Assembly: GCA_002269645.1 (NCBI GenBank)
Contig: NIVC01003643.1
Location: 21,963 to 85,962 of the forward strand
Origin: Macrostomum lignano
Taxonomy: Eukaryota
DNA: 64,000 nt
Direction of reading: 5' to 3'
Part shown: piece after piece, positions 15,601 through 63,793 of the stretch
How positions within the stretch are numbered: position 1 is the stretch's first letter
How the letters are laid out: each line of letters begins with the position of its first letter
Position numbers and translations under genes: made by a program
Notes under the pieces: generated by a model
The model's input: the letters and a program-made list of their open reading frames with translations, nothing else
Told to the model about the DNA's origin: nothing
Database searches by the model: none

Positions 15601-18600
15601 GGCTGGGTGAGGGGTTGGCTGGGTGAGGGGTTGGCTGGGTGAGGGGTTGGTTGGGTGAGGGGTTGGCTGGATGAGGGGCTGGCTGAGTGAAGGGTTGGCT
15701 GGGTGAGGGGCTGGCTGGGTGAGGGGCTGGCTGGGTGAGGGGCTGGCTTGGTGAGGGGTTGGCTGGGTGAGGGGTTGGCTGGGTGAGGGGTTGGCTGGGT
15801 GAGGGGTTGGCTGGGTGAGGGGTTGGCTGGGTGAGGGGTTGGCTGGGTGATAGATTTGACAGGTTTATCAGTTTTTTACTGAATTAGCCATTAATAGTGA
15901 TAAAGAAGCAAAAAATGGCGTGGAACTAACGATGACCTCCAGCAATGGAATCTCCGTCGCTGCCAAACTGCGCAGGAGGCGGTGGTGCCGGCGCTGGCAG
16001 CTGCGATGACAACGTCACCGGTGGCTGTTGCTGCGAGGCTTCTGAAGCTGCGTAGCCGCCTCCAGCCGCCGCGACGGCATCCACCGAGCCGTTGTTTTCA
16101 GCCATCTGGCGCTGCAGTTTGTAGGGCGGCTGCGACCGCGTCAGCCGACGATCGGGATGGGGTGGCTGCTGCGGAGACTGCGGAGTTTGCGGCGTCTGCG
16201 GCGTTCGGCTCCTCGGCGAAGCCGTCGGCCGCAGGCCGCCCCTGGCCGCAGTTGGCCGCCTGGACTCTTGAGCCACCGATGATGCCGCGTTGAAATCTTC
16301 GCTGTCCATCGTGCGATAGGACTCGAGCAGCTGCAGCTGCTGCTGCTGGGGCTGGCGATGCTGCTGGGACGGGTCCGGCTCGCGGCGCTCGAATCCGTTT
16401 TCTGCGTCACAGGCGTCTGCCGAGTCTTGATGGCCCTCCCGCTGCTCCTCCTGCTGCTGTTGAACTGGTGCCACGACGCCTCTGAGACGGCGCCGGGTAG
16501 ACGAAGACGGCGACTTTGACCGGCTGGAGGGGGGTGTCGCTGGTGGCCTGGGCTGAATGTCCTGCGGGAGTGACAGAGTGACACATTGGCTGAGTGACAC
16601 ATTGGCTGAGTGACACATTGGCTGAGTGACACATTGGCTGAGTGACACATTGGCTGAGTGACACATTGGCTGAGTGACACATTGGCTGAGTGACACATTG
16701 GCTGAGTGACACATTGATAAAGTGGGACCTGAACTAAATGAAATTCAGATTAATTCATTCACTCGTAACTGAATGCTCTCATGCTTATAAAAACACTTAA
16801 ATTTGTTGTTAGGGTGGTTATAAACGTTATAAAAGTAAAAGGCTAGCTATAAATTAACAAAAAAACAAATCTTTATGAGCATTATGAGCAGTTTGTCTCA
16901 CTGCCGGGTCGTTCGTGTCAGCTGAGAGTCTTCGGTCTCCCAGTTGTGCCGGCTGCTCACCGCCAGATTCGTAGCAGGAGGCGTCCAGCGAGACGGTCCT
17001 GGTGGAGCAGTGCAGCATCGGCGGCCTTCTGCTGGCGCCACCTTCAGCCAGCTGTGCGGCCTGAGTCCCCTGATCCGCTTGTTCTTCATCAGAACCGTCA
17101 TCCTCTTCATCATTGCTTGAGCAGCTGCTTTCGTTCCGTTGTTGCTGCTGTGGCTGTTGCTGGGGTTGAGTTTGAAGCGTGTTAGAGCTGTGTGTTAGAG
17201 CTGTTAGCTGCGCTTGTCAACTACTGTTAGGGTTGGGGTTGGGGTTAGGGTTGTTTATGGTTAGGGTTAGGGTTAGGGTTAGGGTTAGTGTTAGTGTTAA
17301 TGCTACAGTGGCATTTGGGTTGCGCTACTAATGAAAAGTGCATGTACTACTGTACTCGTAAGTACCAAATTGACAGACGCTCGCATCTGATCCTGCAGCG
17401 AGTTCTGGCTGGCCAGTTCGAGGTCCTTGCACCGCTGCCTGTAGTGGCTGGCCAGGATCAGCTTGCAGTAGTTCAGCTGCCGCTGCTTGGCGTAGTCCCA
17501 CGGGGTGGCGTGGTCCCGGTCCCGCGCCTCCATGTCGGCTGCGGAGCGGTTCGGGAGACTGATGGAGTGACAGACTGATGGAGTGACAGGCTGATGGAGT
17601 GACAGGCTGATGGAGTGACAGACTGATGGAGTGACAGACTGATGGAGTGACAGACTGATGGAGTGACAGACTGATGGAGTGACAGGCTGATGGAGTGACA
17701 GGCTGATGGAGTGACAGACTGATGGAGTGACAGACTGGTGGAGTGACAGACTGGTGGAGTGACAGGCTGATGGAGTGACAGGCTAATTGGGTGACAGGCT
17801 GATAGAGTGACAGGCTGATGGAGTGACAGGCTGATGTAGTGACAGGCTGATGGAGTGACAGGCTGATGGAGTGACAGACTGGTGGAGTGACAGACTGATG
17901 GAGTGACAGACTGATGGAGTGACAGGCTGATGGAGTGGCAGGATGATGGAGTGACAGGCTGATGGAGTGACAGACTGATGAAGTGACAGACTGATGGAGT
18001 GACAGACTGGTGGAGTGACAGGCTGATGAAGTGACAGGCTGATAGAGTGACAGGCTGATGGAGTGACAGGCTAATTGGGTGACAGGCTGATAGAGTGACA
18101 GGCTGATGGAGTGACAGACTGATTGAGTGACAGGCTGATGGAGTGACAGGCTGATAGAGTGACAGGCTGATGGAGTGACAGGCTTATAGAGTGACAGGCT
18201 GATGGAGTGACAGGCTGATGGAGTGACAGGCTGATTGGGTGACAGACTGATGAAGTGACAGGCTCCGAACTCACCACCCTGGTCCAGCAGGAAGTTGAGC
18301 ACTTCGCCGTGGCCACCGATAGTGGCGAGGTGAACAGCGGACCGGCTGTCCTGGTCGCGGTAGTCAATGATGGACTTGCCGCCCACCTCCATGATGATCT
18401 TGCAGGCCGGGAGCGACCCTGCAAGCGGTTGGTTTGGTTCCGTGAAAATACGAGCCAATTCGCTTGCTTGCTCGTATTGCTTGCATTCGGTGTCTTCTAA
18501 AAGAAAGTGTTTCTTCGAAACAGAAACAGATTCCTCACCCTGCTCAGCGGCCACCATCAAGACGTTTTTTCCGCTCATGTCTGTCACGACCGCGTTTTCC

Positions 18601-21600
18601 TCCGTGATGAGGGTCTGCAATTGAGATGAGCTGCGTTAGCAAGAATTCTCCCAGAATCTCCACTGAGATTTCCCCTGGGACCCCATGGAATTCCCCTCAG
18701 AATTCCCCACTGACAATGTTGCTCTAAAAGATTTCTGAAGAAAATCGATATTGATATTGAGCTGACCCTCAGGCACTCCAGCGGTTCCTGGCGCCTGACG
18801 GCCCAGTGCAGGAAGGTCCAGCCGGAGGCGTCCCGCTCCATGCCGTCGGCGAATTCGTTGACTTGGACCAGCCGGCTGAGGATGGCGAAGTGGTCGATGT
18901 TGTCGAGACGGCAGGCCCACATGGACGGCGTGGTCAGGTCTCTGTCCCGGACGCTGGGGTTGGCCCGGCTCTTCAACAGGATCTGCGGGGTGCGGCGATT
19001 CTCAGGATGAGACGATTCTCAGGGTGAGACGATTCTCAGGGTGAGACGATTCTCAGGGTGAGACGATTCTCCGGGTGAGACGGTTCTCGAGAGGAGATGA
19101 TTCTCAGGGTGAGACGATTCTCGAGAGGAGATGATTCTCAGGGTGAGACGATTCTCAGGGTGAGACGATTCTCAGGATGAGACGATTCTCAGGGTGAGAC
19201 GATTCTCAGGGTGAGACGATTCTCAGGATGAGACGATTCTCAGGGTGAGACGGTTCTCAGGGTGAGACGATTCTCAGGATGAGACGATTCTCCGGGTGAG
19301 ACGGTTCTCGAGAGGAGATGATTCTCAGGGTGAGACGATTCTCGAGAGGAGATGATTCTCAGGGTGAGACGATTCTCAGGGTGAGACGATTCTCAGGATG
19401 AGACGATTCTCAGGGTGAGACGATTCTCTGGGTGAGACGATTCTCAGGGTGAGACGATTCTCAGGATGAGACGATTCTCAGGATGAGACGATTCTCCGGG
19501 TGAGACGGTTCTCGAGAGGAGATGATTCTCAGGGTGAGACGATTCTCAGGGTGAGACGATTCTCCGGGTGAGACGGTTCTCGAGAGGAGACGATTCTCAG
19601 GGTGGGACGATTCTCAGGGTGAGACGATTCTCAGGGTGAGACGATTCTCAGGGTGAGACGATTCTCAGGGTGAGTTGATTCTTAGGATAAGACGATTCTC
19701 AGGATGAGACGATTCTCAGGATGAGACGATTCTCAGGATGAGACGATTCTCAGGATGAGACGATTCTCAGGATGAGACGATTCTCAAGATGAGACGATTC
19801 TCAGGGTGAGACGATTCTCAGGGTGAGACGATTCTCAGGGTGAGACGATTCTCCGGGTGAGACGGTTCTCGAGAGGAGATGATTCTCAGGGTGAGACGAT
19901 TCTCGAGAGGAGATGATTCTCAGGGTGAGACGATTCTCAGGGTGAGACGATTCTCAGGATGAGACGATTCTCAGGGTGAGACGATTCTCAGGGTGAGACG
20001 ATTCTCAGGATGAGACGATTCTCAGGGTGAGACGGTTCTCAGGGTGAGACGATTCTCAGGATGAGACGATTCTCCGGGTGAGACGGTTCTCGAGAGGAGA
20101 TGATTCTCAGGGTGAGACGATTCTCGAGAGGAGATGATTCTCAGGGTGAGACGATTCTCAGGGTGAGACGATTCTCAGGATGAGACGATTCTCAGGGTGA
20201 GACGATTCTCTGGGTGAGACGATTCTCAGGGTGAGACGATTCTCAGGATGAGACGATTCTCAGGATGAGACGATTCTCCGGGTGAGACGGTTCTCGAGAG
20301 GAGATGATTCTCAGGGTGAGACGATTCTCAGGGTGAGACGATTCTCCGGGTGAGACGGTTCTCGAGAGGAGACGATTCTCAGGGTGGGACGATTCTCAGG
20401 GTGAGACGATTCTCAGGGTGAGACGATTCTCAGGGTGAGACGATTCTCAGGGTGAGTTGATTCTTAGGATAAGACGATTCTTAGGATGAGACGATTCTCA
20501 GGATGAGACGATTCTCAGGATGAGACGATTCTCAGGATGAGACGATTCTCAGGATGAGACGATTCTCAAGATTAGATGATTCTCAGGGTGAGACGATTCT
20601 CAGGGTGAGACGATTCTCAGGGTGAGACGATTCTCAGGGTGAGACGATTCTCAGGGTGAGACGATTCTCAGGGTGAGACGATTCTCAGGATGAGACGATT
20701 CTTAGGATAAGACGATTCTCAGGATGAGACGATTCTCAAGATTAGATGATTCTTCGGGTGAGACGATTCTCAGGATGAAACGATTCTCAGGATGAGACGA
20801 TTCTCAGGATGAGACGATTCTCAGGATGAGACGATTCTTAGGGTGAGACGATTCTCTGGGTGAGACGATTCTCTGGGTGAGACGGTTCTCGAGAGGAGAC
20901 GATTCTCAGGGTGGGACGATTCTCAGGATGAGACGATTCTCAGGATGAGACGATTCTCAGGATAAGACGATTCTCAGGATGAGACAATTCTCAGGATGAG
21001 ACGATTCGAACCTTACCTTCAGACACTCTGTGGTGTGCGTGGTGACGGCCCAATGCAGCGGTGCGCGCCCCATGCTGTCCTGACAGTCAACACTTGCCCT
21101 ATGATTGACAAGCAGCTCGGTGAAATTCCACAGGCCTTTGTGAACGGCCAGGTGCAACGCTGTTGACTGATCTGGAAATATTGGATTCGAAGTTTACAGC
21201 TGCAAATCAGAGTGTCAAAGTCTGAGTCGAAGTCAAATAGGGCTCAACTATTCGACAGATGGTGTAAACTTTTGGGACACCCGAAAGAAGGAAGCTGAGG
21301 ACATCACTAGTCTATACGTAGTCTTAGGTATAGTCTCGCCTCAAACTGCACAGGCGCGCTTATGCAGCACACCCTACTGAACAAGCTGAGCTTTCAGTAG
21401 AGAAGCAAGAAAATTCAAAGAATTTTTAGCGGTGCAATGCAAAAAACTGGAGTAAAATAAAATGCGAAACAGACCGTGCGCGACAGAGTTGACATCGGCA
21501 CCGTGGCGGAGCAGCCAATCCGCGGTGTCGAACTGCTCGAACTGCACGGCGTACATCAGCAGGCCGCGGCCCATGCCGTCGCACTCGTCCAGGCAGGCCG

Positions 21601-24600
21601 GGTCTGCCACGGAAAGGAGAGAGAAGGGAGAGAGAGAGAGTGAGAGAGAGAGCTCGAGAACAATGGCAGCTCGGTGGCAGCAAATGGACTTGGCAATTTA
21701 GAGAAAAGAAGAGAAGTGACAGAAGGGTGACGAGAGGTGCGCGCACCCGATATTTGTATCAAACAATTGAATCAAGAGCAGTGTGAGAGAGAGAGGCAGT
21801 GAGTGTGGCAGAGCAGAGCCAGACCCGACCGTTTTTTTAAGACTTTTATGCAGTCATTTTTCTCTCATTTCTGATTCCGCTCCGTCACCCCACCCTCGCA
21901 TATATGCGGCTGCCTGCTGCCTATTATTGGCGAGTCAAAGGCGCTCTCAGTGTGGCGGCCCCATGCTGAGCTTTTCATTGCTTTCCCGCATGCTGTAGGC
22001 CCCGTGTCTGGTTAATAGGCAGCTGCTTATTAGATATGAATCTGGGCTGCACTCAGGTGTGAATTGCATTAATGCGTTATTCCTAGAAATTGATGAAATA
22101 TTGCAGTTTACACCTGCACCAGTCCAACCAGTCCAACCGGTATCTAACCAGCACCTATGGGTGTCCAACCAGTATCTAAACAGCACCTATGGGTGTCCAA
22201 CCGGTATCTAACCAGCACCTATGGGTGTCCAACCGATATCTAAACAGCACCTATGGGTGTCCAACCAGTATCTAAACAGCACCTATGGGTGTCCAACCGG
22301 TATCTAACCAGCACCTATGGGTGTCCAACCGATATCTAAACAGCACCTATGGGTGTCCAACCGGTAGCTAAACAGCACCTATGGGTGTCCAACCGGTAGC
22401 TAAACAGCACCTATGGGTGTCCAACCGGTATCTAAACAACACCTATGGGTGTCCAACCGGTATCTAAACAGCACCTATGGGTGTCCAACCGGTATCTAAA
22501 CAGCACACCTAACAGAGCTTTGCAGCAACCCACGGCACCGCATAATCCAACAAACTCTAGAAATATTCGCTCTGGCCTTAGCTGTCGCCATTGAGTACTT
22601 CTAACAATGCATTTATCTGTACTCAACAGCATATTATGCCCCAAAAATTACAACTCCGCCAATCAACTTTGAGTGGCGGACTCAAGACTTCTAGGGCGCA
22701 TTTGTTTTTACTAAAATCGAAAAATGGTAAAGATCTCTGCCAAAACACCCAGTGTTTTGTCTCCCGCCCCTGACCCGCCTTTGGTATCCCACCCCTGGTA
22801 GCCCCTGGTCTCCCGACCCTGGTCTCCCGACCCTGGTCTCCCGACCCTGGTCTCCCGACCCTGGTCTCCCGACCCTGGTCTCCCGACCCTGGTCTCCCGA
22901 CCCTGGTCTCCCGACCCTGGTCTCCCGACCCTGGTCTCCCGACCCTGGTCTCCCGACCCTGGTCTCCCGACCCTGGTCTCCCGACCCTGGTCTCCCGACC
23001 CTGGTCTCCCGACCCTGGTCTCCCGACCCTGGTCTCCCGACCCTGGTCTCCCGACCCTGGTCTCCCGACCCTGGTCTCCCGACCCTGGTCTCCCGACCCT
23101 GGTCTCCCGACCCTGGTCTCCCGACCCTGGTCTCCCGACCCTGGTCTCCCGACCCTGGTCTCCCGACCCTGGTCTCCCGACCCTGGTCTCCCGACCCTGG
23201 TCTCCCGACCCTGGTCTCCCGACCCTGGTCTCCCGACCCTGGTCTCCCGACCCTGGTCTCCCGACCCTGGTCTCCCGACCCTGGTCTCCCGACCCTGGTC
23301 TCCCGACCCTGGTCTCCCGACCCTGGTCTCCCGACCCTGGTCTCCCGACCCTGGTCTCCCGACCCTGGTCTCCCGACCCTGGTCTCCCGACCCTGGTCTC
23401 CCGACCCTGGTCTCCCGACCCTGGTCTCCCGACCCTGGTCTCCCGACCCTGGTCTCCCGACCCTGGTCTCCCGACCCTGGTCTCCCGACCCTGGTCTCCC
23501 GACCCTGGTCTCCCGACCCTGGTCTCCCGACCCTGGTCTCCCGACCCTGGTCTCCCGACCCTGGTCTCCCGACCCTGGTCTCCCGACCCTGGTCTCCCGA
23601 CCCTGGTCTCCCGACCCTGGTCTCCCGACCCTGGTCTCCCGACCCTGGTCTCCCGACCCTGGTCTCCCGACCCTGGTCTCCCGACCCTGGTCTCCCGACC
23701 CTGGTCTCCCGACCCTGGTCTCCCGACCCTGGTCTCCCGACCCTGGTCTCCCGACCCTGGTCTCCCGACCCTGGTCTCCCGACCCTGGTCTCCCGACCCT
23801 GGTCTCCCGACCCTGGTCTCCCGACCCTGGTCTCCCGACCCTGGTCTCCCGACCCTGGTCTCCCGACCCTGGTCTCCCGACCCTGGTCTCCCGACCCTGG
23901 TCTCCCGACCCTGGTCTCCCGACCCTGGTCTCCCGACCCTGGTCTCCCGACCCTGGTCTCCCGACCCTGGTCTCCCGACCCTGGTCTCCCGACCCTGGTC
24001 TCCCGACCCTGGTCTCCCGACCCTGGTCTCCCGACCCTGGTCTCCCGACCCTGGTCTCCCGACCCTGGTCTCCCGACCCTGGTCTCCCGACCCTGGTCTC
24101 CCGACCCTGGTCTCCCGACCCTGGTCTCCCGACCCTGGTCTCCCGACCCTGGTCTCCCGACCCTGGTCTCCCGACCCTGGTCTCCCTCCCTGGTCTCCCG
24201 ACCCTGGTCTCCCTCCCTGGTCTCCCGACCCTGGTCTCCCGCCCTGGTCTCCCGACCCTGGTCTCCGCCCCTGGTCTCCCGACCCTGGTATCCCGCCCCT
24301 GGTCTCCGCCCCTGGTCTCCCGCCCCTGGTCTCCCGCCCCTGGTCTCTGCCCCTGGTCTCCGCCCCTGGTCTCCGCCCCTGGTCTCCGTACTGTTGCTGT
24401 GCAGAGCTTTCAGAGTCTCCAAGTCGCCAGTTTTGCTGGCGCTGAGTGCCAGAGACATGCCCAGAGGCAAGCCAGGCTCCTGAGACCGCAGCAGGCTCAT
24501 CCTCCGGCCTTCGAGGTCCTGCCAGCGCCACTCGAATCGTTCCGGCCGTTCCACGGGCGGCGTCATTGGCGACAGTCCCCGCAGAGACGAGTTGCTTAGC

Positions 24601-31301: not shown

Positions 31302-33493
31302 TCAGTTCGCGCACTCGCCCTCGGCATCCAGCTCCGCGCTCTCCCGCTTGCACCCGTCCGCAGTCGCGGCCGTCGCCGAATCTTCGCTTGTGCAACTCTT
31401 CGCCGTCGCCGCCTTCTCCTGCCGCTGCCGATGGTCGGTTTCGTCCTGATCGACGATTGCGGAAGTCGCCGCTGCCGAGCTGGTGGGCGCCGGCGTAGCG
31501 GTGGAGGTCGCGGAGGAGCCGCCGCCGCTGCCGTCGACGAGAATAGCCTCGATCTCGTGCTGGATGAAGGCCCAGGGCACTGAGCTGCCAGGCAGGAGGC
31601 AGCGCTCGCCGCTCGGACAGTAGATGGATTCGGACTGGCGGTCGGGACCGGCCGAGGACTCGCGCAGGTCGCCGAGCTGCCGGTGGATGCTGTCTCTGGC
31701 GCAGGGGAAGCAGAACTTGTGCGCCGCCTCGGCCGGGCACTGGACGAAGTGCGTCTCCTCCATGCGGCTCTTGCAGAAACTGCAGCGCAGAGTCTGCCGG
31801 ATGCAGAGCCTCTTGGATGGGGCATGCTGCTGCTGCTGCTGCTGCAGTTGAAGGATTCCTGCAACTGGAGATTATTTGGATTGCTTTTAATTATTTCTGC
31901 AGTTGGCGCAAGCCACCCTACAGTACTCATTATCAGGCATCATCCCCAATCAGTCACCCCAATAGCACCAACCCCTCCCCCAATGGCGCCACCCCCTCAC
32001 CAATGGCGCCACCCCCTCACCAATGGCGCCAACCCCTCCCCAATAGCGCCAATCCCTCCCCAATAGCGCCAACCCCTCCCGCAAAGGCGCCAACCCCTCC
32101 CTAAATGGCACCACTCTCTCTTCAACAAAAGGCGCCACCCATTTCCCCAATGGCTCACCTCCGCTGGCGCCCTTCACGGGCAGCAGTGATTTCGGCATCA
32201 GCCGAGTCTTCGGCGTCAGCTGGGGCGGCCGCAGCTCCCTGTTGGGCGCCGGCAGCCGGTCAGCCAGAGGCCGCTCTCGCAGCCGCGTCACCCGCTCGCC
32301 GACCAGCTCAGTGAGGAGGCGCCAGTCGCCGGGGCAGCGCTCGTACTCCAGCAGCAGGGCAGCGGCTGACGCGGCCGACGCGGAGGTGGCCGCCGACGTC
32401 GCAATCGAGGCGGCGTCGCGGCTCATCTGGCTGGCCACGCCGGCGCACGAGTTGAAGACGGTCCTGGAGCCCACGGGGTACTCGAAGAACAGCTTCAGCT
32501 CCAGCTGGTCCAGCCGGGTCATCCCGGTGCCAACGTCGGCGGCGAACACGCAGCCCAGGCTGCCGCCGCTCGGCTGGCCTTTGAGGCGAACCTGGCGGAA
32601 CAGGAGTTCATGAGTGAGTTCATGAGTGAGTTCATGAGTGAGCTCATGAGTGAGTTCATGAGTGAGTTCATGAGTGAGTTCAGGAGTGAGGTCATGAGTG
32701 AGTTCATGAGTGAGTTCATGAGTGAGCTCATGAGTGAGTTCACGACTGAGTTCATGAGTGAGTTCATGAGTGAGTTCATGAGTGACTTCATGAGTGAGTT
32801 CACGACTGAGTTCATGAGTGAGCTCATGAGTGAGTTCATGAGTGAGCTCATGAGTGAGTTCATGAGTGACTTCATGAGTGAGTTCACGACTGAGTTCATG
32901 AGTGAGCTCATGAGTGAGTTCATGAGTGAGTTCATGAGTTCATGAGTGAGTTCATAAGCGCTTACATGAAACGGGCAGCATTTGCTCAGCGCATCAACAA
33001 TGTCCCTGGCAACGTAGTCAGAACCGCCGCCTCCACCGCTTCCATTGCTGCTGTTGCTCCCGTTGCTGGCCTGCTGTTGCTGGACAGCGGAGGTGGACGA
33101 GCTCGCTAGCAGGTCGGGCCGCACGCCGCCACCGCTTCCTGCTGGCGGCGAGTCCGACCGAATCCCCAGCGACAGCGGCAGCGGCGGAGGCGGCGGCAGG
33201 CAGAGCAGCTGGTGCTGCAGCCCGATGGCTGAGAATTTGCTAAGCTGCGGAGGCGGTGGAGGCGGCGGTGGCGGCTGCTGTTGCTGCTGCTGTTGCTGTT
33301 GCTGTTGAGCGGCCGCGGACGAGCCGCCGGCCATCTTCAGCAGACGGGCCCGCTCGATCACCAGCTCCACTCGGTCGGCGCCCTCGTAGTTGACGCAGCC
33401 GCGGCAGACCAGCTCGGAGAAGTCGGTGAGCAGAGCCCAGGGCGGCCGGGGCAGATCGCACAGGTAGCACTGGCGGCGGAGCAGGAAAGACAT
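31302..33493 (-). CDS. IRF2BP: Interferon regulatory factor 2-binding protein family (IRF2BP/IRF2BPL/Pits-like); exons 33493-32966, 32591-32159, 31858-31302; 505 aa
   Basis: N-terminal C4 zinc finger [45 protein letters not shown]. The central block PFH|VRLK...[12 protein letters not shown] is restored by splicing. C-terminal [23 protein letters not shown]...HKFCFPC...[20 protein letters not shown]. All phases are consistent. Confidence 0.95.
31945..32150. repeat. ~21-bp repeat (CAATGGCGCCACCCCCTCACC-like) in IRF2BP intron 2
   Basis: Direct inspection. Confidence 0.8.
32605..32955. repeat. 12-bp repeat (GAGTTCATGAGT) filling IRF2BP intron 1
   Basis: Occupies most of the 374-nt intron 32592-32965. 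Confidence 0.95.
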
Positions 33494-39243: not shown

Positions 39244-50076
<10,833 letters not shown>

Positions 50077-53108: not shown

Positions 53109-56715
<3,607 letters not shown>

Positions 56716-57799: not shown

Positions 57800-60700
57800 A
57801 TGGGTAAACGCAATGCTGTTGGCAGCATGAGTAAGTGCTGTTAAACTAGTCAATAGCCTTTCAATTGTGCTCCCATATCTTTATTGCATGTACCTGTGTA
57901 ACGCTACCTAATGCACGTCATGTAACATTTAGTACGTACTGACACAGAATAGAAACTTTATTATAAATTCACCACCAGGTGGCCCGAGCGACATTGTCCA
58001 GGTAGAAAATCAGCGACGCCAAAGCTTAGCCCTGAGCGAAATGGTGTCGGAGGCAAGCGAGGCCGCCAGCGACGCTAGCAGTGCCACCGGAGCCAAGGCG
58101 TCTCGCTCCTCCAGGCTCATTGAAGATTTTCTCGCTCGCGAAGAGCGCAGAGGAAGCTGGTACTACCGGCTGAGAATGATTGTCATTCTAGCTCTGCCGC
58201 TCACCCTGGCCATCGGATTTGCCGGCTCGGAGATCTACTTTGCTGCTCAATCTCTGATTCGCGGCATTAGCATTGACGAATACTTGAGCTCGAAGAATCA
58301 GCTCGATGGCCTCAGCTATGCCCTCATGCAGGAGGGGATTTTGACGACAGTTACTTCTGTCAGTCCAAACAACGTTAAATCCCGCTTTGAGCTGTCGGCT
58401 AGCCGTGAACTGGTTGATGTGGGGGCAGAGACTCATCTGCCAAACTGGGCTCAGCAACTGTTGGCGAATGCGTCCGGCACGTGGCGTCGCAATGGTTTCG
58501 TTCCTGAGCTGCCGGTTGCAAACGAGACCATCATTAGGACTAACGCTGATGCCTGGGCCAGAGATATCCATCGAATATTCAGCATCGGCTCAGATTTCTC
58601 ATACCGACTGGCCAGCCCATCAAATCTGTACGTGTCCGAGCGGGAAATGTGGGCCGGCATGCACGCTGACAGAGTTCTGGTGTTGTACGCTGACTACATC
58701 GCCATCACCGCGGGCTTGGGATACGCCTACTTCACGGAATGCGCGAGTCGCTGGCCTCACTGGGCCTGGTTCGTCCGCCTAACCGGAGGCATCGCCGACC
58801 TTCGAGTGAACAGCGGCCGAGCCCTTCCCAAGGCCAGCAAGTTTTTTGCCAAGGAGCTGAACACCAGCGCAGCCAACGGCAAGGCCGCACTGTGGCTAAG
58901 CATGTCAGATGAAATCGCGCGTCAGTCGCTTGACCGATGCGTCAACGCCACCGTGTTGGAGAGGCGCAACCTGGCTGAACTGTGGCTGTACCTCAGCCAA
59001 GACCACTGGGCGAATGTGCGAGAATATCATAATCAGCTAGACAACCTGCTGAACGGCAGAATTAAAGCGGCTAATCGCGACTCAACCTCCTACACAATTG
59101 GATTCGGATTCCTGGTGCTGGCCCTGATGCTCCTCTGCCTCGGAATCGGGTATTGGTACAGCCACAAGATTGCGGAGACCGTTGAGAGCATCATAGATCT
59201 AGCCAGGCTGATTGTGACCAAGAAAGCGGAAACAGCTGAGGAAAAGGTGATTTTCATAAATATAAATATAGCATTCAGGCAAGCAAGAGAAGTACTGTTG
59301 CAAGTAAAGCAGAGTTTAATCATCTTGCTCTTGAACTGTAGTAATGTACACATTTTGCTGTGATAGGGTAGCGAAACTCCAGTCTCAGCACTGTACAAGT
59401 TGTACTCAGCGCTCGAATGCGCCACGCAGTGGCTGTCCCTGATATATATATTATATATCTTTTGCAATTCCTTCGATTTACTTTTCTAGAGACGAGCTGA
59501 CGCAATCATCTACAACATTCTACCTGCCGAAGTGGTCTGGGATCTCAAGCGAGGCATTGTCCCAGAGGCCAGTCGCTTCGAGATGAGCACCGTCTTCTTT
59601 AGCGGGGTAGAAAATTTCGAAGATCTGGTGAAGAAAAGTCGACCTATTGAAGTATTTCAGATGTTGAACACCATTTACAGGTAGGTCTAAAAGAAGCTCA
59701 TTCCGACTGCAAGTTTGACAAGTTGTCCCGCAATCTGCAGTGCGTGAGCATGAATTTTAAACCTCACGAAAAAGACAGGCGCGTTGTACGGGCTGTCTCA
59801 AGCCTCAATTCCATCTCATCTCTCCTCGTTCCCCTGCCCATGCAGTGCCTTCGACAGCCGCATTGACAACTACGATGCGTACAAAGTCGAGACGATCTCC
59901 GACACCTACATGTTGGTCAGCGGTGCTCCCCGGCTGAACGGCAATCAGCACGCGCTGGAGGTGGCTCGGCTCAGTCTCGACCTGATGGCCACGTCGAAAA
60001 ATTTGGTATTGAGCCACCTGCCGGAGGAGCAAATCCATCTGCAGATTGGATTTCACTCGGGTAACGGGCTTCTCTGAGACACAACAGACTCTAGTGTGCA
60101 CAAAATGGCTTGGAAAATCCTACAGGCCATTAAATTGTGAATTTCAGGGCCATTAGTGACTGGCATGATTGGCAGCAAGAGTCCGCGATATTGTCTGTTC
60201 GGTGACACGGTGAACACGGCCTCGCGGATGAAGTCTCACGGTGAAGGTGAGTTGTTGCTAGACAATACTGGCGCAGAAGCAGCAGAGAAAGGTTAGCTAG
60301 GAAGCCCACAAAATTGAAATGGTTATTTTGATCTATTTACTCTTAGTGGATATCGGTTTGAATTGATAGTTCGCTGCCACCATATTCTTAACATTCAACT
60401 TTCCCTAGTAGTTCTCTGCAGGCTTGAATTCCGAGGCCTGACTCCTCCTTGCAACCTATAATATACCTCATTTCTAAGCTTATTCTTACCTTCAATTTTC
60501 TAGGCTAGCTTTGGAAAGGAAGCTTAACCTGTGTAAGAAAATGAGTAAACTATGAATAAACCTGCTCTTGACTTAGAAAATTCCGCAGAGCCCTAACTAG
60601 ACTAACTACAGACGTTTCCGGATCGGAAACTACTAACAGTAGTGTAAAAGCAAATTGCATTATGCGCTAAACTATGCCCTACAATAAAAAAACAAATTTC

Positions 60701-60938
60701 AGCTTTCCGCATCCACATGAGCGAGCCGTCGGCCCTGCTACTTGAGGAATGCGGGGGCTTTAAAATCAAAGCTCGAGGCGAGATCGAAGTGAAGGTAACG
60801 GTGAAAATCCTTTGCTTCTTGCCTCCCTGTTCTTGCGAAAGAAACTCAACTGAAAACTTTCAGGGCAAAGGGCCAATGCGGACCTACTGGCTGATTGGCG
60901 AGGCGTCCCACAGCAAAACTGCCCGGTTTGAAGACTGA
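57800..60938 (+). CDS. NIT-domain receptor-type guanylyl cyclase (NIT-GC-like: TM, NIT-like domain, TM, coiled coil, class III cyclase); exons 57800-57830, 57979-59246, 59490-59680, 59846-60060, 60148-60246, 60703-60794, 60864-60938; ~656 aa
   Basis: Two TM segments ([16 protein letters not shown]; [21 protein letters not shown]) flank a ~290-aa helical region resembling NIT (LSYALMQE...SRELVD...LPNW). Cyclase motifs: [32 protein letters not shown]|[20 protein letters not shown]|[10 protein letters not shown]. All junction phases are consistent. The NIT call comes from pattern recognition only; the cyclase call is firm. Confidence 0.85.
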
Positions 60939-61635
60939 CGGCTTGAGAAGCGATATTTACTAGCACTGCTCTGATAGCGTAGAGTTAGTAAAAGTTATAA
61001 TAGCGCTTGTGCACTTTAACTGCAGGACAATCACCTACTTAGCACAGAAAAGTAGAACTGCACAAACTCAATGGATCTGCTAAAATCGACGCACCGCTTT
61101 TGTGCAATGGCACACAGCTTGATTAATTGGATTAAACTATAACGCAGGTACGGACTTACAAACTTGGCAAAATATAGTGCATGCAAGATGAAACTGGAAC
61201 AAATGTAGAAGCTAACGTGTAGAAGAGGAACTGTGTACTTTACTCATTAGAAATCAGGTGCGCCTGAGCTGCTCAGCTTTCATTTATTGCACCGTAACGA
61301 ATGAGGGTAGCATTTGAAGCTTTGTTAGCCGCGTGCAAAACATTTCGGTTGCAGTAATTAACGAATAGAAGACAGCAGCTTAGTGCATGACGACGAACCG
61401 TTTCTGAACTTTCTTTGACGCAAACTGGTCACTGCGCGATGCAGTGAATACGAAAACATATTTGTCTAGCACTCCGTCCGGATGTTTAAGCAGTCCTTGG
61501 CATGAATGCAACTGATTTATCTTTGATAAAAGTAGTATATTAAGGACATTAGCCAGTGTTGCAAAATAGCTTAATTTAGAATAACTCGCAAATGCTGTAT
61601 CCAACGCAAAATTATCGGCCCTGTTGAAATTTGAG

Positions 61636-61679
61636 ACGGACAGACAGACACTAAGACAGACAGATAGACAGACAGACAC

Positions 61680-61742
<63 letters not shown>

Positions 61743-61935
61743 TACAGACAGACAGACATACAGACAGACAGACAGACAGACAGACATACAGACAGACATA
61801 CAGACAGACATACAGACAGACATACAGACAGACATACAGACATACAGACAGACAGACACTAAGACAGACAGACACTAAGACACTAAGACAGACAGACAGA
61901 CAGACACTAAGACAGACAGACAGACAGACAGACAT

Positions 61936-61998
<63 letters not shown>

Positions 61999-62134
61999 TA
62001 CAGACAGACAGACAGACAGACAGACAGAAACTAGACAGACAGACAGACACTAAGACACTAAGACAGACAGACACTAAGACACTAAGACAGACAGACAGAC
62101 AGACACTAAGACAGACAGACAAACAGACAGACAT

Positions 62135-62165
<31 letters not shown>

Positions 62166-62168
62166 GGC

Positions 62169-62209
<41 letters not shown>

Positions 62210-62218: not shown

Positions 62219-62697
62219 ACCAGAAGGTCAGGATGCTTCATTAAATTAAATCCAGTTTTACTCCCTATTGTGCCTAGGGAAAAATATCCCCAAAGCAGGC
62301 AGCTGAGAATTTATTAATCCCAAACTCCAAAGTGCCCTGATATTGCCCAGCTTGCTGTCCGAGCAGATTTACTTTGATACGCCTTAAAGCTCAGCGTCTC
62401 TACTCAACTTGATTTGCTGGCTCACCGAATAGAGCTCTCACAGCGCCTACACAGCAACGGAAACTCTTCAAGGCGCCCAAAAAGTTTGCGGATTACTCTT
62501 TCAGTGGATTGATTGATCGGCGTGGGATGAATTTCTGATTGGATGTTGGATTCCTTGATAAAAATTTTGAGCGGAGGAAAATGTTTTGATAAAGAATAAA
62601 TTTGATTGGTCGCAAGATTCCTTTAAAAGATTTCAAACAAATATTGGCTGAAATTTGTTCCCGAAGTCATTCGGTGAGTCCTTGGCTTGCCGTGGCC

Positions 62698-63793
62698 ATG
62701 TCTTCCTTCTACGAGCGGGTCAAGGCCGTGTACGGCGGCATCCTGGTCTTCGGCCTGTTCGGCAACGCGGCGCGTCGTGCTGACCGCCGCCAAGCAGAAT
62801 ACGGCGCACAAAGCCGTGAACATCTACCTGGGCCACCTGGCCGTGGCTGACATTCTTCATCTGTTGTCAATTCTGCCGCTGATGCACCTGGCCTCTGTGC
62901 AGAGCTGGGTCTGGGGCGAGGCAGCCTGCAAGGCTTACTACATGATCAATTACCTGAACTGGACCGCCAGCATCTTCATCATCACCGCCATGGGATTTGA
63001 CCGATTCGTAGCCGTGGTGCTGCCGGCCAGTCGCAGCGCCTGCGCAGCCGCCGCTTCGCTTGGGGGCTCCTGCTGTGCCTGTGGTCGCTGAGCGGCCTGC
63101 TGGTCAGCCCCATCGGCGTCTCCAGCAGCGTCACCACCTGGGGCGAGGGCGAAAATGCCACCTACAGCTGCGGCCACATCCTGTTTGATAGCTTCGACGC
63201 TTCGAACGGATCCTCGATTGGCGAAGACCCGAATCCCGACGCCTGGTTCACGCGGCAGATAAAGGGCATTGTGCAGAACGAGTTCAGCTTTGCTATGTAC
63301 AATCTTGTAGTTGGCTGCGCAGTGCACTCACTCTGCTCACGGCTTTCTATGGATTAATAATTCACAAGGTGCGGCGTCAGGCCACGGCAACCATCGCCGG
63401 AATCCACCAGGCTCAGCAGCGGCTCAGCCGGGTGAGCAAAATGGTGATTGCCGTCATCGTGTCCTACATTGTCTGCTCCGTGCCGCACTGGATTCACGTC
63501 AACCTCGGCGTCAGGGGCTTCATCCGATGGAATGTCTGGTGGCGTCCTCGCACATCACTACGATTCTCGCTTACCTGAACAGCGCCTTCAATCCCGTTCT
63601 GTACGCCTGCTTCAACAGGCCGTTCTGCAGAAGTCTCAAACGTCTGCTGCCGGCTGGTTTTGTCCGACGCTCGCTTGAACGGCTCGGCTGTCTGCAGCGG
63701 CGGCCAATCCGAGTGCTGCCAGAGAGCGAAATCCCATGCCTCAGCCAGGTGACGTCACTGGGTCGCGCGACGCACTCCCACTATGGAGCTTGA
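62698..63793 (+). pseudogene. Rhodopsin-class peptide GPCR (somatostatin/allatostatin-C/opioid receptor-like) with five frameshifts: pseudogene or sequencing-error artefact
   Basis: Motifs in changing frames: GLFGN (TM1), IYLGHLAVAD (TM2), WVWGEAACK, ASIFIITAMGFDRFVAVVLP (TM3), LWSLSGLLVSP (TM4), P-LTLLTAFYGLI (TM5), RVSKMVIAVIVSYIVCSVPHW (TM6), LAYLNSAFNPVLY (TM7). Shifts at ~62770, 63040, 63141, 63325 and 63515; no in-frame stops once corrected. The start may extend upstream. Confidence 0.8.

What the first reader, a model, noticed from the sequence alone, without database searches (positions are those of the whole stretch)
59490..60938. The cyclase domain lacks the first metal-binding Asp but keeps the beta-type catalytic residues: possible obligate-heterodimer or pseudo-cyclase receptor
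Seen: [11 protein letters not shown], with codon GGG at 59604-59606 where class III cyclases have (T-I-Y-F-S)-D-(I-V-G-F). VETIGD is changed to VETISD, and SRMES to SRMKS. The GTP-specifying E and C (YKVET, PRYC) and the transition-state N and R (NTASR) are retained. Knowledge: each active site needs two Asp from one monomer and N/R/E/C from the other, as in soluble GC alpha/beta. Inference: homodimers would be inactive or weak, but this protein could complete one site with an Asp-donating partner, suggesting an undescribed heterodimeric or dominant-negative NIT-GC sensing system. The ORF is otherwise intact across seven exons.
Basis: partly seen in the sequence, partly recalled or inferred. 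Interest (0 to 1): 0.7.

Follow-up and report, generated by a model that had tools for sequence, protein, structure and literature searches.

The report
Guanylate cyclase receptor lacking its metal site
An intact animal gene for a membrane guanylate cyclase of the NIT-sensor type has lost the residues that hold the catalytic metal and the GTP phosphates but kept those that hold the rest of GTP, so it most likely makes cGMP only when paired with a second, complete cyclase subunit, as the beta subunit of the nitric-oxide receptor does.

Summary
Codon GGG at 59604-59606 puts Gly441 where class III cyclases carry their first metal-binding Asp. This gene model is intact, with six GT-AG coding exons and 625 aa. 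The loss is not isolated. The phosphate loop is changed from DIVGFT to GVENFE. The gamma-phosphate Arg is Gln532; that column is Arg in 123 of 123 nearest relatives. All five residues that the opposite protomer must supply are kept (E481, C553, N560, R564, K601). Human soluble guanylate cyclase beta-1 shows the same pattern: position 1 lost, position 3 kept, position 4 lost. The cyclase domain itself is of the receptor (ANP-receptor) type, so the resemblance to beta-1 is convergent. The N-terminal half is a very divergent NIT-GC module. It has two transmembrane helices and matches a NIT-GC profile with hhalign probability 96.9%. It lacks the conserved NIT arginines. I found no orthologue and no partner. 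Environmental eukaryote contigs carry other NIT-GC genes without Asp1 and without this Arg. Those genes are under purifying selection (dN/dS about 0.12). An acceptor-only subunit of a heterodimer is the best reading (about 0.5). It is a new variant of a known kind, of moderate interest.

The parts
58041..59246 (+). Coding exon 1 (aa 1-402). It holds the cytosolic tail, TM1, the NIT-like ectodomain, TM2 and the start of the signalling helix.
   Evidence: ORF and GT donor. ATG context GCGAAATGG. End-to-end homology to NIT-GC N-terminal modules.
58170..58238 (+). Predicted transmembrane helix 1 (aa ~44-66).
   Evidence: Kyte-Doolittle 19-residue peak above 1.6. Aligns with TM1 (K-M..L..P) of NIT-GCs.
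58239..59090 (+). Divergent NIT-like ectodomain (aa ~67-350). The conserved NIT residues are replaced: the Arg of LQxER is G99, the Arg of HR is N161, the Tyr of FY is G183, and the Arg of ERALG is A224. The scaffold residues W204, G227 and W315 are kept.
   Evidence: hhalign probability 96.9%, E 1.6e-10 against 8 NIT-GC N-termini. Exhaustive phmmer E 7.4e-7 to NIT-GC fragment P0045. No Pfam NIT hit. Alignment. All 4 N-x-S/T sequons of the protein lie here. The AF2 model is all-helical but of low confidence.
59091..59159 (+). Predicted transmembrane helix 2 (aa ~351-373).
   Evidence: Hydropathy peak of 2.39. Aligns with TM2 of NIT-GCs.
59490..59680 (+). Coding exon 2 (aa 403-466). It holds the end of the signalling helix ([12 protein letters not shown]) and the first cyclase strand with the degenerate metal/phosphate loop.
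   Evidence: AG/GT boundaries. Gapless alignment to GC-A. No alternative copy of this exon in the window.
59604..59606 (+). Codon GGG = G441, at the place of metal-binding Asp1 (sGC alpha-1 D486; sGC beta-1 has G426 here).
   Evidence: The column is D in 114, E in 9 and G in 0 of 123 relatives.
59607..59621 (+). Degenerate phosphate-binding loop V442-E443-N444-F445-E446 (canonical I-V-G-F-T).
   Evidence: Compare AC5 C2 (SIANFSE) and AC2 C2 (SIPDFKE).
59846..60060 (+). Coding exon 3 (aa 467-538). It holds E481 (guanine-specifying, 59889-59891), S484, D485 (metal Asp2, kept, 59901-59903) and Q532 (60042-60044) in place of the gamma-phosphate Arg (sGC alpha-1 R574, AC5 C1 'MRVGIH').
   Evidence: The Arg column is 123 of 123 R.
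60148..60246 (+). Coding exon 4 (aa 539-571). It holds R551, C553 (guanine-specifying, 60192-60194), N560 (ribose, 60213-60215), R564 (triphosphate/transition state, 60225-60227) and K566 in SRMKS (60231-60233).
60703..60794 (+). Coding exon 5 (aa 572-601). It ends with K601, the equivalent of sGC beta-1 K593 and AC2 K1065.
60864..60938 (+). Coding exon 6 (aa 602-625 plus the TGA stop at 60936-60938).
   Evidence: The intron position EVK|GKG is shared with the metagenome relative L005.

Best explanation
The gene encodes a two-pass membrane receptor-type guanylate cyclase of the NIT-GC family. Its layout is tail, TM1, divergent NIT-like ectodomain, TM2, signalling helix and class III cyclase domain, with no kinase-homology domain.

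The cyclase domain is an 'acceptor-only' (sGC-beta / adenylate-cyclase-C2 type) subunit. It can offer the guanine, ribose and triphosphate/transition-state residues (E481, C553, N560, R564, K601) to a site at the dimer interface. It cannot offer the other half, because Asp1 is Gly, the phosphate loop is GVENFE and the gamma-phosphate Arg is Gln.

Two copies of this protein would therefore form two incomplete sites, giving little or no cGMP synthesis.

Paired with a GC subunit that has an intact donor half (a canonical NIT-GC or another receptor GC), it would form one complete catalytic site. It would also form one degenerate pseudo-site of the kind that binds forskolin in adenylate cyclase.

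Shown here: the sequence pattern, the architecture, the family relationship, and the existence and constraint of similar Asp1-less NIT-GC genes elsewhere.

Inferred: loss of homodimer activity (from sGC beta-1 and general class III mechanism), heterodimerisation, and that this particular gene is expressed.
For: 1. The gene is intact. It has six GT-AG exons and a gapless 216-residue alignment to GC-A. CDS GC3 is 66% against 41% GC in introns and flanks.
2. Of the eight canonical active-site positions defined for sGC and AC (PMC3591389), positions 1 (D to G441) and 4 (R to Q532) are lost. Both belong to the metal/phosphate-donating protomer. Positions 2, 5, 6, 7 and 8, from the other protomer, and Asp2 are kept. 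In 123 nearest relatives these positions are D114/E9, E123, D123, R123, C122, N123, R122 and K123.
3. Departures from conserved columns are enriched in the donor half: 6 of 8 columns against 18 of 88 elsewhere (Fisher p = 0.003, post hoc).
4. Human sGC beta-1 has the same lost/kept/lost pattern: FSGIVGFN, VETVGD, ITIGIH. Alpha-1 has the complement. AC C2 has S at Asp1 and D or N in place of the loop Gly. Homodimers of alpha or of beta have no activity because the full site cannot be rebuilt.
5. There is a precedent for obligate heterodimers among receptor GCs: ODR-1/DAF-11. An inverse, alpha-like nematode receptor GC turned up among the hits: P0003, with PRYIVFG and AAKME.
6. Other NIT-GC genes without Asp1 and without the Arg exist. 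L005 has YFNSVVDFP, ITITAGIH and SRMKS. L008 has FFSSVHEFS and IEIKAGVH. The N-terminus of L005 matches the NIT-GC profile at 96.8%. L005 against L008 gives dN/dS 0.12. Contigs 96% identical in DNA encode identical cyclase exons: 4-6 differences in about 700 nt, all synonymous, against 29-34 differences in about 315 intron nt.
Against: - No partner gene lies in the 64-kb window, and the rest of the genome was not available.
- No orthologue of this gene was found in any collection, so constraint on this gene itself could not be measured.
- Its cyclase domain departs from the consensus at 25% of highly conserved columns, against a median of 2%. Its NIT-like domain has lost the conserved arginines. 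Both would also fit relaxed constraint.
- The link between this gene and the S-type metagenome genes is weak: NJ support 32%, 40-43% identity, and N-termini not alignable pairwise. Their constraint is an analogy, not direct evidence.
- There are no expression or protein data.
Confidence: 0.5

Rival explanations
1. It is a catalytically dead pseudo-cyclase. It acts on its own as a homodimer, for example as a GTP-binding or scaffolding receptor. Alternatively it acts as a dominant-negative damper that titrates active GC subunits into less active dimers, rather than as a required half of an enzyme.
For: The donor-half losses are the same. The ectodomain has also lost the conserved NIT ligand residues, as expected for a non-sensing modulator. 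Beta-beta sGC catalytic dimers form readily and are inactive.
Against: All five acceptor-half catalytic residues are kept exactly. That would be unnecessary for a pure scaffold. A heterodimer with a complete partner still has one full site, so simple poisoning is not predicted by the mechanism.
Confidence: 0.2
2. It is still an active homodimeric guanylate cyclase. Another carboxylate stands in for Asp1: E443, two residues after G441, together with D485. Or the enzyme works with one metal at low rate.
For: An acidic residue lies at +2 or +3 after the lost Asp in this gene (E443), in L005 (D) and in L008 (E). Nine NIT-GC-type sequences carry Glu instead of Asp at position 1.
Against: Non-catalytic half-sites also carry Asp or Asn at +3 (AC2 C2 SIPDF, AC5 C2 SIANF), and catalytic AC5 C1 has Glu at +2 next to an intact Asp1. 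An acidic residue there is therefore not a sign of rescue. The gamma-phosphate Arg and the loop Gly/Thr are lost as well. I know of no class III cyclase that is active without Asp1 (own knowledge).
Confidence: 0.12
3. It is a gene in early decay, or one that is never expressed: a recently inactivated NIT-GC paralogue whose frame has not yet been broken.
For: It departs at 25% of highly conserved cyclase columns, against a median of 2%. The sensor domain is so divergent that Pfam NIT fails. NIT-GC families are large and lineage-specific, so redundant copies are expected.
Against: The 1,878-nt frame is open across five introns with canonical splice sites. Codon-position bias is strong, with GC3 66% against 41% in introns. 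72 of 96 highly conserved columns, including every acceptor-half residue and the Gly/Pro core, are kept. The substitutions are concentrated in one functional half rather than spread.
Confidence: 0.13
4. It is a sequencing or assembly error at codon 441.
For: No reads were available to check.
Against: GGG is two changes away from GAY. The flanking residues, and R532Q in another exon, tell the same story.
Confidence: 0.02

Closest known systems
Soluble guanylate cyclase beta-1 subunit (human GUCY1B1; PDB 2WZ1, 3UVJ, 4NI2, 6JT0)
   Same: It has the same half-site pattern. Gly stands at metal Asp1 (FSG...), Asp2 is kept, and the gamma-phosphate Arg of the donor half is lost (ITIGIH). The guanine-specifying E and C, the ribose N, and the triphosphate R and K are all kept. 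The homodimer is inactive, and activity needs an alpha subunit that supplies the Asp pair.
   Different: The window protein's cyclase domain is of the receptor-GC type (E 3e-72 to GC-A against 2.5e-33 to beta-1; 100% NJ support for the receptor-GC group). The resemblance is therefore convergent. It has no H-NOX/PAS domains. It is a two-pass membrane protein with a NIT-like ectodomain. The loop Gly is also lost here (GVENFE against GIVGFN).
NIT-domain guanylate cyclases (NIT-GC; Moroz et al. 2020, PMC7400543; Platynereis NIT-GC1/2, Jokura et al., bioRxiv 10.1101/2023.08.02.551600)
   Same: The architecture is the same: TM, NIT-like domain, TM, signalling helix and ANPR-type cyclase, with no kinase-homology domain. 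There is end-to-end homology of the N-terminal module. The cyclase traits VETISD and ..NF are shared with the Lineus NIT-GC.
   Different: Described NIT-GCs are treated as self-sufficient enzymes. NIT-GC1 alone gives NO-donor-dependent cGMP in COS-7 cells. The fragments and relatives I could read carry Asp1: P0002, P0045, P0047 and L007. Here Asp1 and the Arg are lost, Pfam NIT is not matched and the conserved NIT arginines are absent. Heterodimers are not mentioned in the NIT-GC papers held in the library.
C. elegans receptor GCs ODR-1/DAF-11 (obligate heterodimer)
   Same: They are membrane receptor GCs in which each monomer is thought to supply essential catalytic residues to a single site. 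Several nematode receptor GCs lack Mg- or GTP-binding residues.
   Different: Those proteins have a ligand-binding ectodomain of the ANPR type and a kinase-homology domain. I did not compare their residues with this gene.
C2 domain of membrane adenylate cyclases (PDB 1AZS_B, 8SL3)
   Same: Asp1 is replaced (by Ser). The loop Gly is replaced by Asp or Asn (SIPDFKE, SIANFSE against GVENFE here). The acceptor N and R are kept. The degenerate site becomes a regulatory (forskolin) pocket.
   Different: C2 also lacks Asp2 and keeps the Arg (LRVGIN). It is fused to C1 in one polypeptide and is ATP-specific.
Asp1-less NIT-GC genes on environmental eukaryote contigs
   Same: They have the NIT-GC architecture. 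Asp1 is lost (Ser), the donor Arg is lost (Thr or Lys), VETISD is present, SRMKS is present in L005, and the acceptor residues are all kept. They show clear purifying selection.
   Different: They are only 40-43% identical to the window protein in the cyclase domain, and the N-termini are not alignable pairwise. The replacement residues differ and the intron positions partly differ. Grouping with the window gene is weakly supported (32%). The source organisms are unknown.
Chytrid rhodopsin-guanylyl-cyclase heterodimers (RGC1/2 + NeoR)
   Same: They are sensor-fused class III GCs that work only as heterodimers with pseudo-symmetric sites.
   Different: They have rhodopsin sensors and a fungal lineage. 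Residue-level asymmetry was not compared here.

Membership tests
Class III nucleotidyl cyclase catalytic domain (Pfam PF00211) | Profile match above the curated threshold | tested here: met
   188.8 bits against a cut-off of 21.9; aa 429-612 cover model positions 3-182 of 183.
Class III nucleotidyl cyclase catalytic domain (Pfam PF00211) | Self-sufficient homodimer: all eight canonical active-site positions present in one chain | tested here: not met
   Position 1 (Asp1) is G441 and position 4 (gamma-phosphate Arg) is Q532. The other six are present.
Guanylate (not adenylate) cyclase specificity | Glu and Cys at the base-specifying positions (sGC beta-1 E473 and C541) | tested here: met
   E481 in YKVET and C553 in PRYCLFG.
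NIT-GC (NIT-domain guanylate cyclase) | Sensor domain flanked by two transmembrane helices, followed by a signalling helix and a cyclase, with no kinase-homology domain | tested here: met
   Exactly two hydropathy peaks, at aa 44-66 and 351-373. Only Guanylate_cyc is found by Pfam. There are 55 residues between TM2 and the cyclase domain.
NIT-GC (NIT-domain guanylate cyclase) | N-terminal module homologous to that of recognised NIT-GCs | tested here: met
   hhalign probability 96.9%, E 1.6e-10 over 372 columns against 8 NIT-GC N-termini. phmmer against 1.8 billion representatives gives NIT-GC fragments P0045 (E 7.4e-7) and P0047 (E 2e-4).
NIT-GC (NIT-domain guanylate cyclase) | Pfam NIT (PF08376) match | tested here: not met
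   No NIT hit even at E up to 10. Relatives P0002, P0045 and P0047 hit it at 7e-16 to 2e-23.
NIT-GC (NIT-domain guanylate cyclase) | Conserved arginines at the interface of the two helical bundles, thought to bind nitrate or nitrite | tested here: not met
   The Arg of LQxER is G99 and the Arg of ERALG is A224 (MAFFT). hhalign also places non-Arg residues there. The role of the arginines is taken from PMC7400543.
NIT-GC (NIT-domain guanylate cyclase) | Two four-helix-bundle fold of the sensor | tested here: inconclusive
   The AF2 model is all-helical, but mean pLDDT is 54 and pTM 0.37. That is too poor for a fold search, so none was run.
Acceptor-only (sGC-beta / AC-C2 type) subunit of a heterodimeric cyclase | Donor-half residues degenerate while acceptor-half residues are intact | tested here: met
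Acceptor-only (sGC-beta / AC-C2 type) subunit of a heterodimeric cyclase | A partner subunit with an intact donor half, encoded in the same genome and co-expressed | not testable with these tools
   Only this 64-kb window is available, and it holds no other cyclase.
Acceptor-only (sGC-beta / AC-C2 type) subunit of a heterodimeric cyclase | Inactive alone, active with partner | not testable with these tools
   This needs an enzyme or cell-based cGMP assay.
Receptor GC of the ANPR/ODR-1 type | ANF-receptor ectodomain and kinase-homology domain | tested here: not met
   No PF01094 or PF07714 hit. Only the cyclase domain is of this type.

The most novel reading that the evidence does not exclude
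NIT-GCs, like soluble guanylate cyclases, are built at least in part as heterodimers. Dedicated acceptor-only subunits have arisen more than once in the family: the Gly-type in this genome and the Ser-type in environmental eukaryotes. These subunits pair with complete subunits (Asp or Glu at position 1). The degenerate catalytic pseudo-site, and here also the arginine-less NIT pocket, would then act as regulatory sites rather than catalytic or nitrate-binding ones. This would change how the large NIT-GC gene families and their co-expression in single neurons are read.
Probability: 0.3. Interest if true: 0.6.

Novelty: new variant of a known kind. Interest (0 to 1): 0.45.

Why it matters
NIT-GCs are a recently recognised, little-studied family of animal cGMP-producing receptors. 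One member has been shown to mediate nitric-oxide feedback in a photoreceptor circuit. Genomes carry 12-15 paralogues whose division of labour is unknown.

If some paralogues are acceptor-only subunits, three things follow:
- Activity assays of single NIT-GCs will give false negatives.
- Co-expression patterns become informative about subunit pairing.
- The family would be a second, independent case, after soluble GC, of a gas- or anion-related cyclase evolving an asymmetric dimer with a spare pocket.

For genome annotation, the practical point is that this gene should not be labelled an active guanylate cyclase on domain content alone.

Tried and rejected
- Pfam NIT on the N-terminal 402 aa gave no hit, even at E up to 10.
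- AlphaFold2 of the N-terminal module from a 4-sequence alignment gave pLDDT 54 and pTM 0.37. I judged this too poor for a fold search, so none was run.
- The orthologue and paralogue hunt failed everywhere:
  - The word-indexed protein search with the full protein gave the Lineus NIT-GC at 34% as best hit.
  - The search with the cyclase domain gave best hits of 45-55%, all canonical.
  - The search with a NIT-GC N-terminal alignment returned only P0045 and a bacterial MCP.
  - An exhaustive phmmer with the N-terminus gave 3 hits, one of them spurious low-complexity.
  - An exact-sequence look-up showed the protein is not in the collection.
  - The metagenome locus search with the protein found no relatives.
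- tblastn of the protein, and of exon-2 peptides from GC-A and Lineus, against the window found no second cyclase and no alternative exon 2 carrying Asp.
- The Moroz et al. sequence table is held with sequences cut at about 430 residues. It therefore shows the NIT motifs but not the cyclase motifs, and could not be used to survey Asp1.
- The flanks of the Lineus and P0045 loci held no further NIT-GC.
- The NJ tree did not resolve whether the window gene and the Ser-type genes share one loss event (32% support).
- dN/dS between the window gene and the metagenome genes (0.32-0.37) is unreliable because dS is saturated.
- Rfam and tRNA scans of the window were empty.
- The source organism could not be named. 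The neighbouring genes (IRF2BP, rhodopsin-type GPCR, CDC5L-like) indicate an animal.
- I considered whether E443 could replace Asp1 and rated it low (see rivals). The tools give no coordinates to test it.
Full report
**What is in the sequence.**

The region 58041-60938 on the + strand holds an intact gene of six coding exons: 58041-59246, 59490-59680, 59846-60060, 60148-60246, 60703-60794 and 60864-60938. Every intron is GT-AG, and the introns are 243, 165, 87, 456 and 69 bp long. The product is 625 aa.

The start codon sits in a good context (GCGAAATGG). The coding sequence is 55% GC with GC3 of 66%, while introns and flanks are 41% GC. I count six coding exons rather than seven, and a 5' non-coding exon cannot be excluded.

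Codon GGG at 59604-59606 is in frame and encodes G441 in [11 protein letters not shown].

**Check of the observation.**

Pfam finds one domain, Guanylate_cyc, at aa 429-612 with E 8.7e-56. Against all PDB sequences the best match is human GC-A/NPR1, with E 3e-72 and a gapless alignment of 216 residues across all four downstream splice junctions. This validates the gene model.

In that alignment:
- FSDIVGF of GC-A lies over FSGVENF
- VETIGDAYM lies over VETISDTYM
- SRMES lies over SRMKS
- [13 protein letters not shown] and NTASR are unchanged

To ask whether this is unusual, I aligned the 123 most similar cyclase domains returned by the protein search. The Asp1 column is D in 114 and E in 9, and never G.

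GGG is two substitutions away from either Asp codon, and the change is accompanied by others nearby. A single-base sequencing error is therefore an unlikely explanation, although no reads could be examined.

The eight canonical active-site positions of sGC and adenylate cyclase are laid out in Allerston et al. 2013 (PMC3591389).
- One protomer supplies positions 1 and 3 (metal Asp, alpha-1 D486 and D530) and position 4 (gamma-phosphate Arg, alpha-1 R574).
- The other protomer supplies positions 2 and 5 (guanine-specifying, beta-1 E473 and C541), 6 (ribose, N548), and 7 and 8 (R552 and K593).

In the 123 relatives these columns are almost invariant: D114/E9, E123, D123, R123, C122, N123, R122 and K123. 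The window protein has G441, E481, D485, Q532, C553, N560, R564 and K601. It departs at exactly positions 1 and 4, both from the donor half, and at none of the five acceptor positions.

The loop after Asp1, whose backbone binds the phosphates (own knowledge, Tesmer et al. 1999), is also altered. I-V-G-F-T has become V-E-N-F-E.

Among 96 columns that are at least 85% conserved, the protein departs at 24. Six of the eight donor-half columns depart, against 18 of the remaining 88 (Fisher one-sided p = 0.003). This test is post hoc and the columns are adjacent, so it is indicative only.

**Comparison with known asymmetric cyclases, checked on PDB sequences.**

| Subunit | Asp1 region | Asp2 region | Donor Arg region | Acceptor N/R region |
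|---|---|---|---|---|
| Human sGC beta-1 | FSGIVGFN | VETVGD | ITIGIH | NTVNLTSRTE |
| Human sGC alpha-1 | FSDIVGFT | VETIGD | MRIGLH | NNVTLANKFE |
| AC2 C2 | FASIPDFKE | TIGSTYM | LRVGIN | — |
| AC5 C2 | FASIANFSE | — | — | — |
| AC5 C1 | FADIEGFT | ILGDCYY | MRVGIH | — |

sGC beta-1 has position 1 as Gly, position 3 kept, position 4 as Thr, and the acceptor half intact. That is the same lost/kept/lost pattern as here. Alpha-1 is the complement.

The window protein therefore carries the signature of the beta/C2 kind of subunit, down to an Asn at the loop Gly as in AC5 C2. Its cyclase domain is nevertheless of the receptor-GC lineage. It scores E 3e-72 to GC-A against 2.5e-33 to beta-1, and the receptor-GC group is separated from sGC with 100% NJ bootstrap support. 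The resemblance to beta-1 is thus convergent.

Allerston et al. report no activity for alpha-alpha or beta-beta catalytic dimers. They explain that the full site cannot be reconstituted in either homodimer.

**The N-terminal half.**

Hydropathy shows exactly two transmembrane segments, at aa ~44-66 and ~351-373. All four N-x-S/T sequons of the protein lie between them. Only about 55 residues of helix (…KKAETAEEK|[12 protein letters not shown]…) separate TM2 from the cyclase domain, and there is no kinase-homology domain. This is the NIT-GC architecture described by Moroz et al. 2020 and Jokura et al..

Pfam NIT is not matched, even at E up to 10. Homology is nonetheless secure:
- An exhaustive phmmer of aa 1-402 against 1.8 billion representatives returns two NIT-GC fragments, P0045 (E 7.4e-7, aligned 35-397) and P0047 (E 2e-4). 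Both hit Pfam NIT at 4e-18 and 2e-23.

The scaffold residues are kept (W204, L213, G227, W315). The residues conserved in the eight comparators are not:
- The Arg of LQxER is G99.
- The Arg of the 'HR' motif is N161, which is now part of a glycosylation sequon.
- The Tyr of 'FY' is G183.
- The Arg of ERALG is A224.

Moroz et al. describe two conserved arginines at the bundle interface as the presumed ligand contacts. So this is a NIT-GC by descent and architecture, but it probably does not bind nitrate or nitrite in the canonical way. An AlphaFold2 model from the shallow alignment is all-helical but of low confidence (pLDDT 54), and I did not use it further.

**Which departures are family traits.**

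The Lineus NIT-GC (P0002) keeps Asp1 and the Arg. It also has FFSDIVNFKE, VETISD and a non-Glu residue in SRMxS, and it departs at 19% of the conserved columns. A canonical metagenome sequence (L007) and an Octopus sequence (P0139) also have VETISD.

VETISD and the loop Asn are therefore not evidence of degeneration by themselves. D441G, V443E, R532Q and E566K are the changes peculiar to this gene.

**Relatives with the same defect.**

A degenerate DNA pattern for [11 protein letters not shown] found six eukaryote-like contigs in the metagenome collection. Five of them encode cyclase domains without Asp1 and without the donor Arg.
- L003-L006 are one gene with short introns: [49 protein letters not shown]. 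The Glu-to-Lys change in SRMKS is the same as in the window gene.
- L008 is intronless over the sequenced 280-aa ORF (TM2 to stop): TIFFSSVHEFSS, IEIKAGVHTG, …SRMQS.

All acceptor positions are kept in both. The upstream exons of L005 match the NIT-GC N-terminal profile (hhalign 96.8%, E 3e-10), so these too are NIT-GCs.

They are constrained:
- L005 against L008 is 72% identical, with dN 0.24, dS about 2.0 and dN/dS about 0.12.
- Contigs about 96% identical in DNA encode identical cyclase exons. Within the coding exons there are 4-6 differences in about 700 nt, all synonymous. In about 315 intron nt there are 29-34 differences. The 'non-synonymous' calls in the script output lie after the stop codon.

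A third variant has Glu at position 1 with all other positions intact (F[TS]EIDGFK). It occurs in nine marine-metagenome sequences. One of them sits directly behind a Pfam-NIT ORF, and its N-terminus resembles that of L005.

The NIT-GC family thus contains Asp-, Glu-, Ser- and Gly-type members at position 1. An NJ tree groups the window gene with the Glu- and Ser-types, but with only 32% support. Its identity to the Ser-type is 40-43% and the N-termini do not align pairwise. I cannot say whether the losses are shared or independent.

**How it most likely works.**

A homodimer of this protein would present two interface sites. Each would have guanine, ribose and transition-state residues but lack one metal ligand, the phosphate loop and the gamma-phosphate Arg. 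By the established two-metal mechanism, and by the behaviour of beta-beta sGC, it should make little or no cGMP.

With a subunit that has a complete donor half, one full site and one degenerate pocket would form, as in sGC and membrane adenylate cyclases. The partner need not be defective in its own acceptor half.

Obligate heterodimers are already accepted for receptor GCs in C. elegans (ODR-1/DAF-11). One nematode receptor GC among my hits (P0003) shows the inverse, alpha-like defect.

I put about 0.5 on the acceptor-only heterodimer subunit. The rival estimates are 0.2 for a non-catalytic modulator or pseudo-cyclase, 0.12 for residual homodimer activity (for example with E443 helping), 0.13 for a gene in early decay or not expressed, and 0.02 for sequence error.

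**Limits.**

No partner, no transcript evidence and no orthologue of this gene were available. Every search for close relatives failed, and the window holds no second cyclase or alternative exon. The source organism is unknown. The neighbouring genes (IRF2BP-like, rhodopsin-type GPCR, CDC5L-like Myb, ankyrin, DXD glycosyltransferase) indicate an animal.

The high overall divergence of both domains is compatible with a specialised subunit, but also with relaxed constraint.

**Novelty and verdict.**

NIT-GCs are known, and so are beta/C2-type half-sites and heterodimeric receptor GCs. The few papers in the library that mention NIT-GCs do not discuss catalytic-residue loss or heterodimers.

The finding is therefore a new variant of a known kind: a NIT-GC with an sGC-beta-like half-site and an arginine-less sensor. 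It has company among environmental NIT-GC genes that are clearly under selection. It is a useful lead for how this family is assembled, and it rests on sequence inference only.

Noticed in passing
window 58239-59090: The NIT-like ectodomain of the same gene lacks the residues conserved in eight comparator NIT-GC modules: G99, N161, G183 and A224 stand in place of R, R, Y and R. It fails Pfam NIT, although the scaffold Trp and Gly residues are kept. The sensor may bind something other than nitrate or nitrite, or nothing.
   Followed up: yes
L003-L006 and L008 (metagenome contigs JAAUXV/JAAUYB/JAAUXU/JAAUYJ/JAAUYM): These are NIT-GC-type genes with Ser at metal Asp1 and Thr or Lys at the donor Arg, with all acceptor residues kept. 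They are under purifying selection (dN/dS about 0.12; contigs about 96% identical in DNA differ only synonymously in the cyclase exons). The source organisms are unknown.
   Followed up: partly
L010 1-2130 and proteins P0113, P0131, P0134, P0148, P0149, P0151, P0162, P0164, P0167: This is a group of intronless marine-metagenome NIT-GCs with Glu instead of Asp at metal position 1 (F[TS]EIDGFK), VETINDSYM and SRMQS. Their N-terminal module resembles that of the Ser-type gene L005, so they could be its complete-site counterparts.
   Followed up: partly
protein P0003 (Aphelenchoides bicaudatus receptor GC): This protein shows the inverse, alpha-like defect. Asp1, Asp2 and the donor Arg are kept, but the guanine Cys is Ile (PRYIVFG) and the transition-state Arg is Lys (AAKME).
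   Followed up: no
window 300-41400 (many arrays), also 53515-54631 and 61634-62209: The density of minisatellites is extraordinary, with 52 TRF rows. Examples are a 48-bp unit x111 at 300-5619, a 17-bp unit x119 at 18988-21007, a 14-bp unit x114 at 22803-24387, and (GTCT)n/(AGAC)n arrays flanking the cyclase gene region. Many read as long spurious ORFs in several frames.
   Followed up: no
window 45077-45510 and 45912-46500: Two arrays of one 151-bp unit appear to be reverse complements of each other, about 400 bp apart, in an AT-rich stretch. This may be a foldback-type element.
   Followed up: no
window 31302-33493 (- strand): This is an IRF2BP-like gene, with an N-terminal IRF-2BP1_2 zinc finger (E 2.6e-28) and a C3HC4 finger (E 3.9e-26). 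A 12-bp tandem repeat (32604-32955) reads through as SLMN-type repeats inside the long ORF. Whether it is coding or intronic is unclear.
   Followed up: no
window 62687-63793 (+ strand): A rhodopsin-family GPCR (7tm_1, E 2.9e-20; FDRF and NPVLY motifs) lies 1.7 kb downstream of the cyclase gene on the same strand.
   Followed up: no
window 42365-43872 (- strand), 17328-18976 (- strand), 54746-55177 (- strand): Other neighbouring genes are a CDC5L-like Myb protein (Myb_DNA-binding, E 3e-24), an ankyrin-repeat protein whose ORF runs into a 16-bp repeat array, and a DXD-motif glycosyltransferase fragment (Gly_transf_sug, E 8e-9).
   Followed up: no
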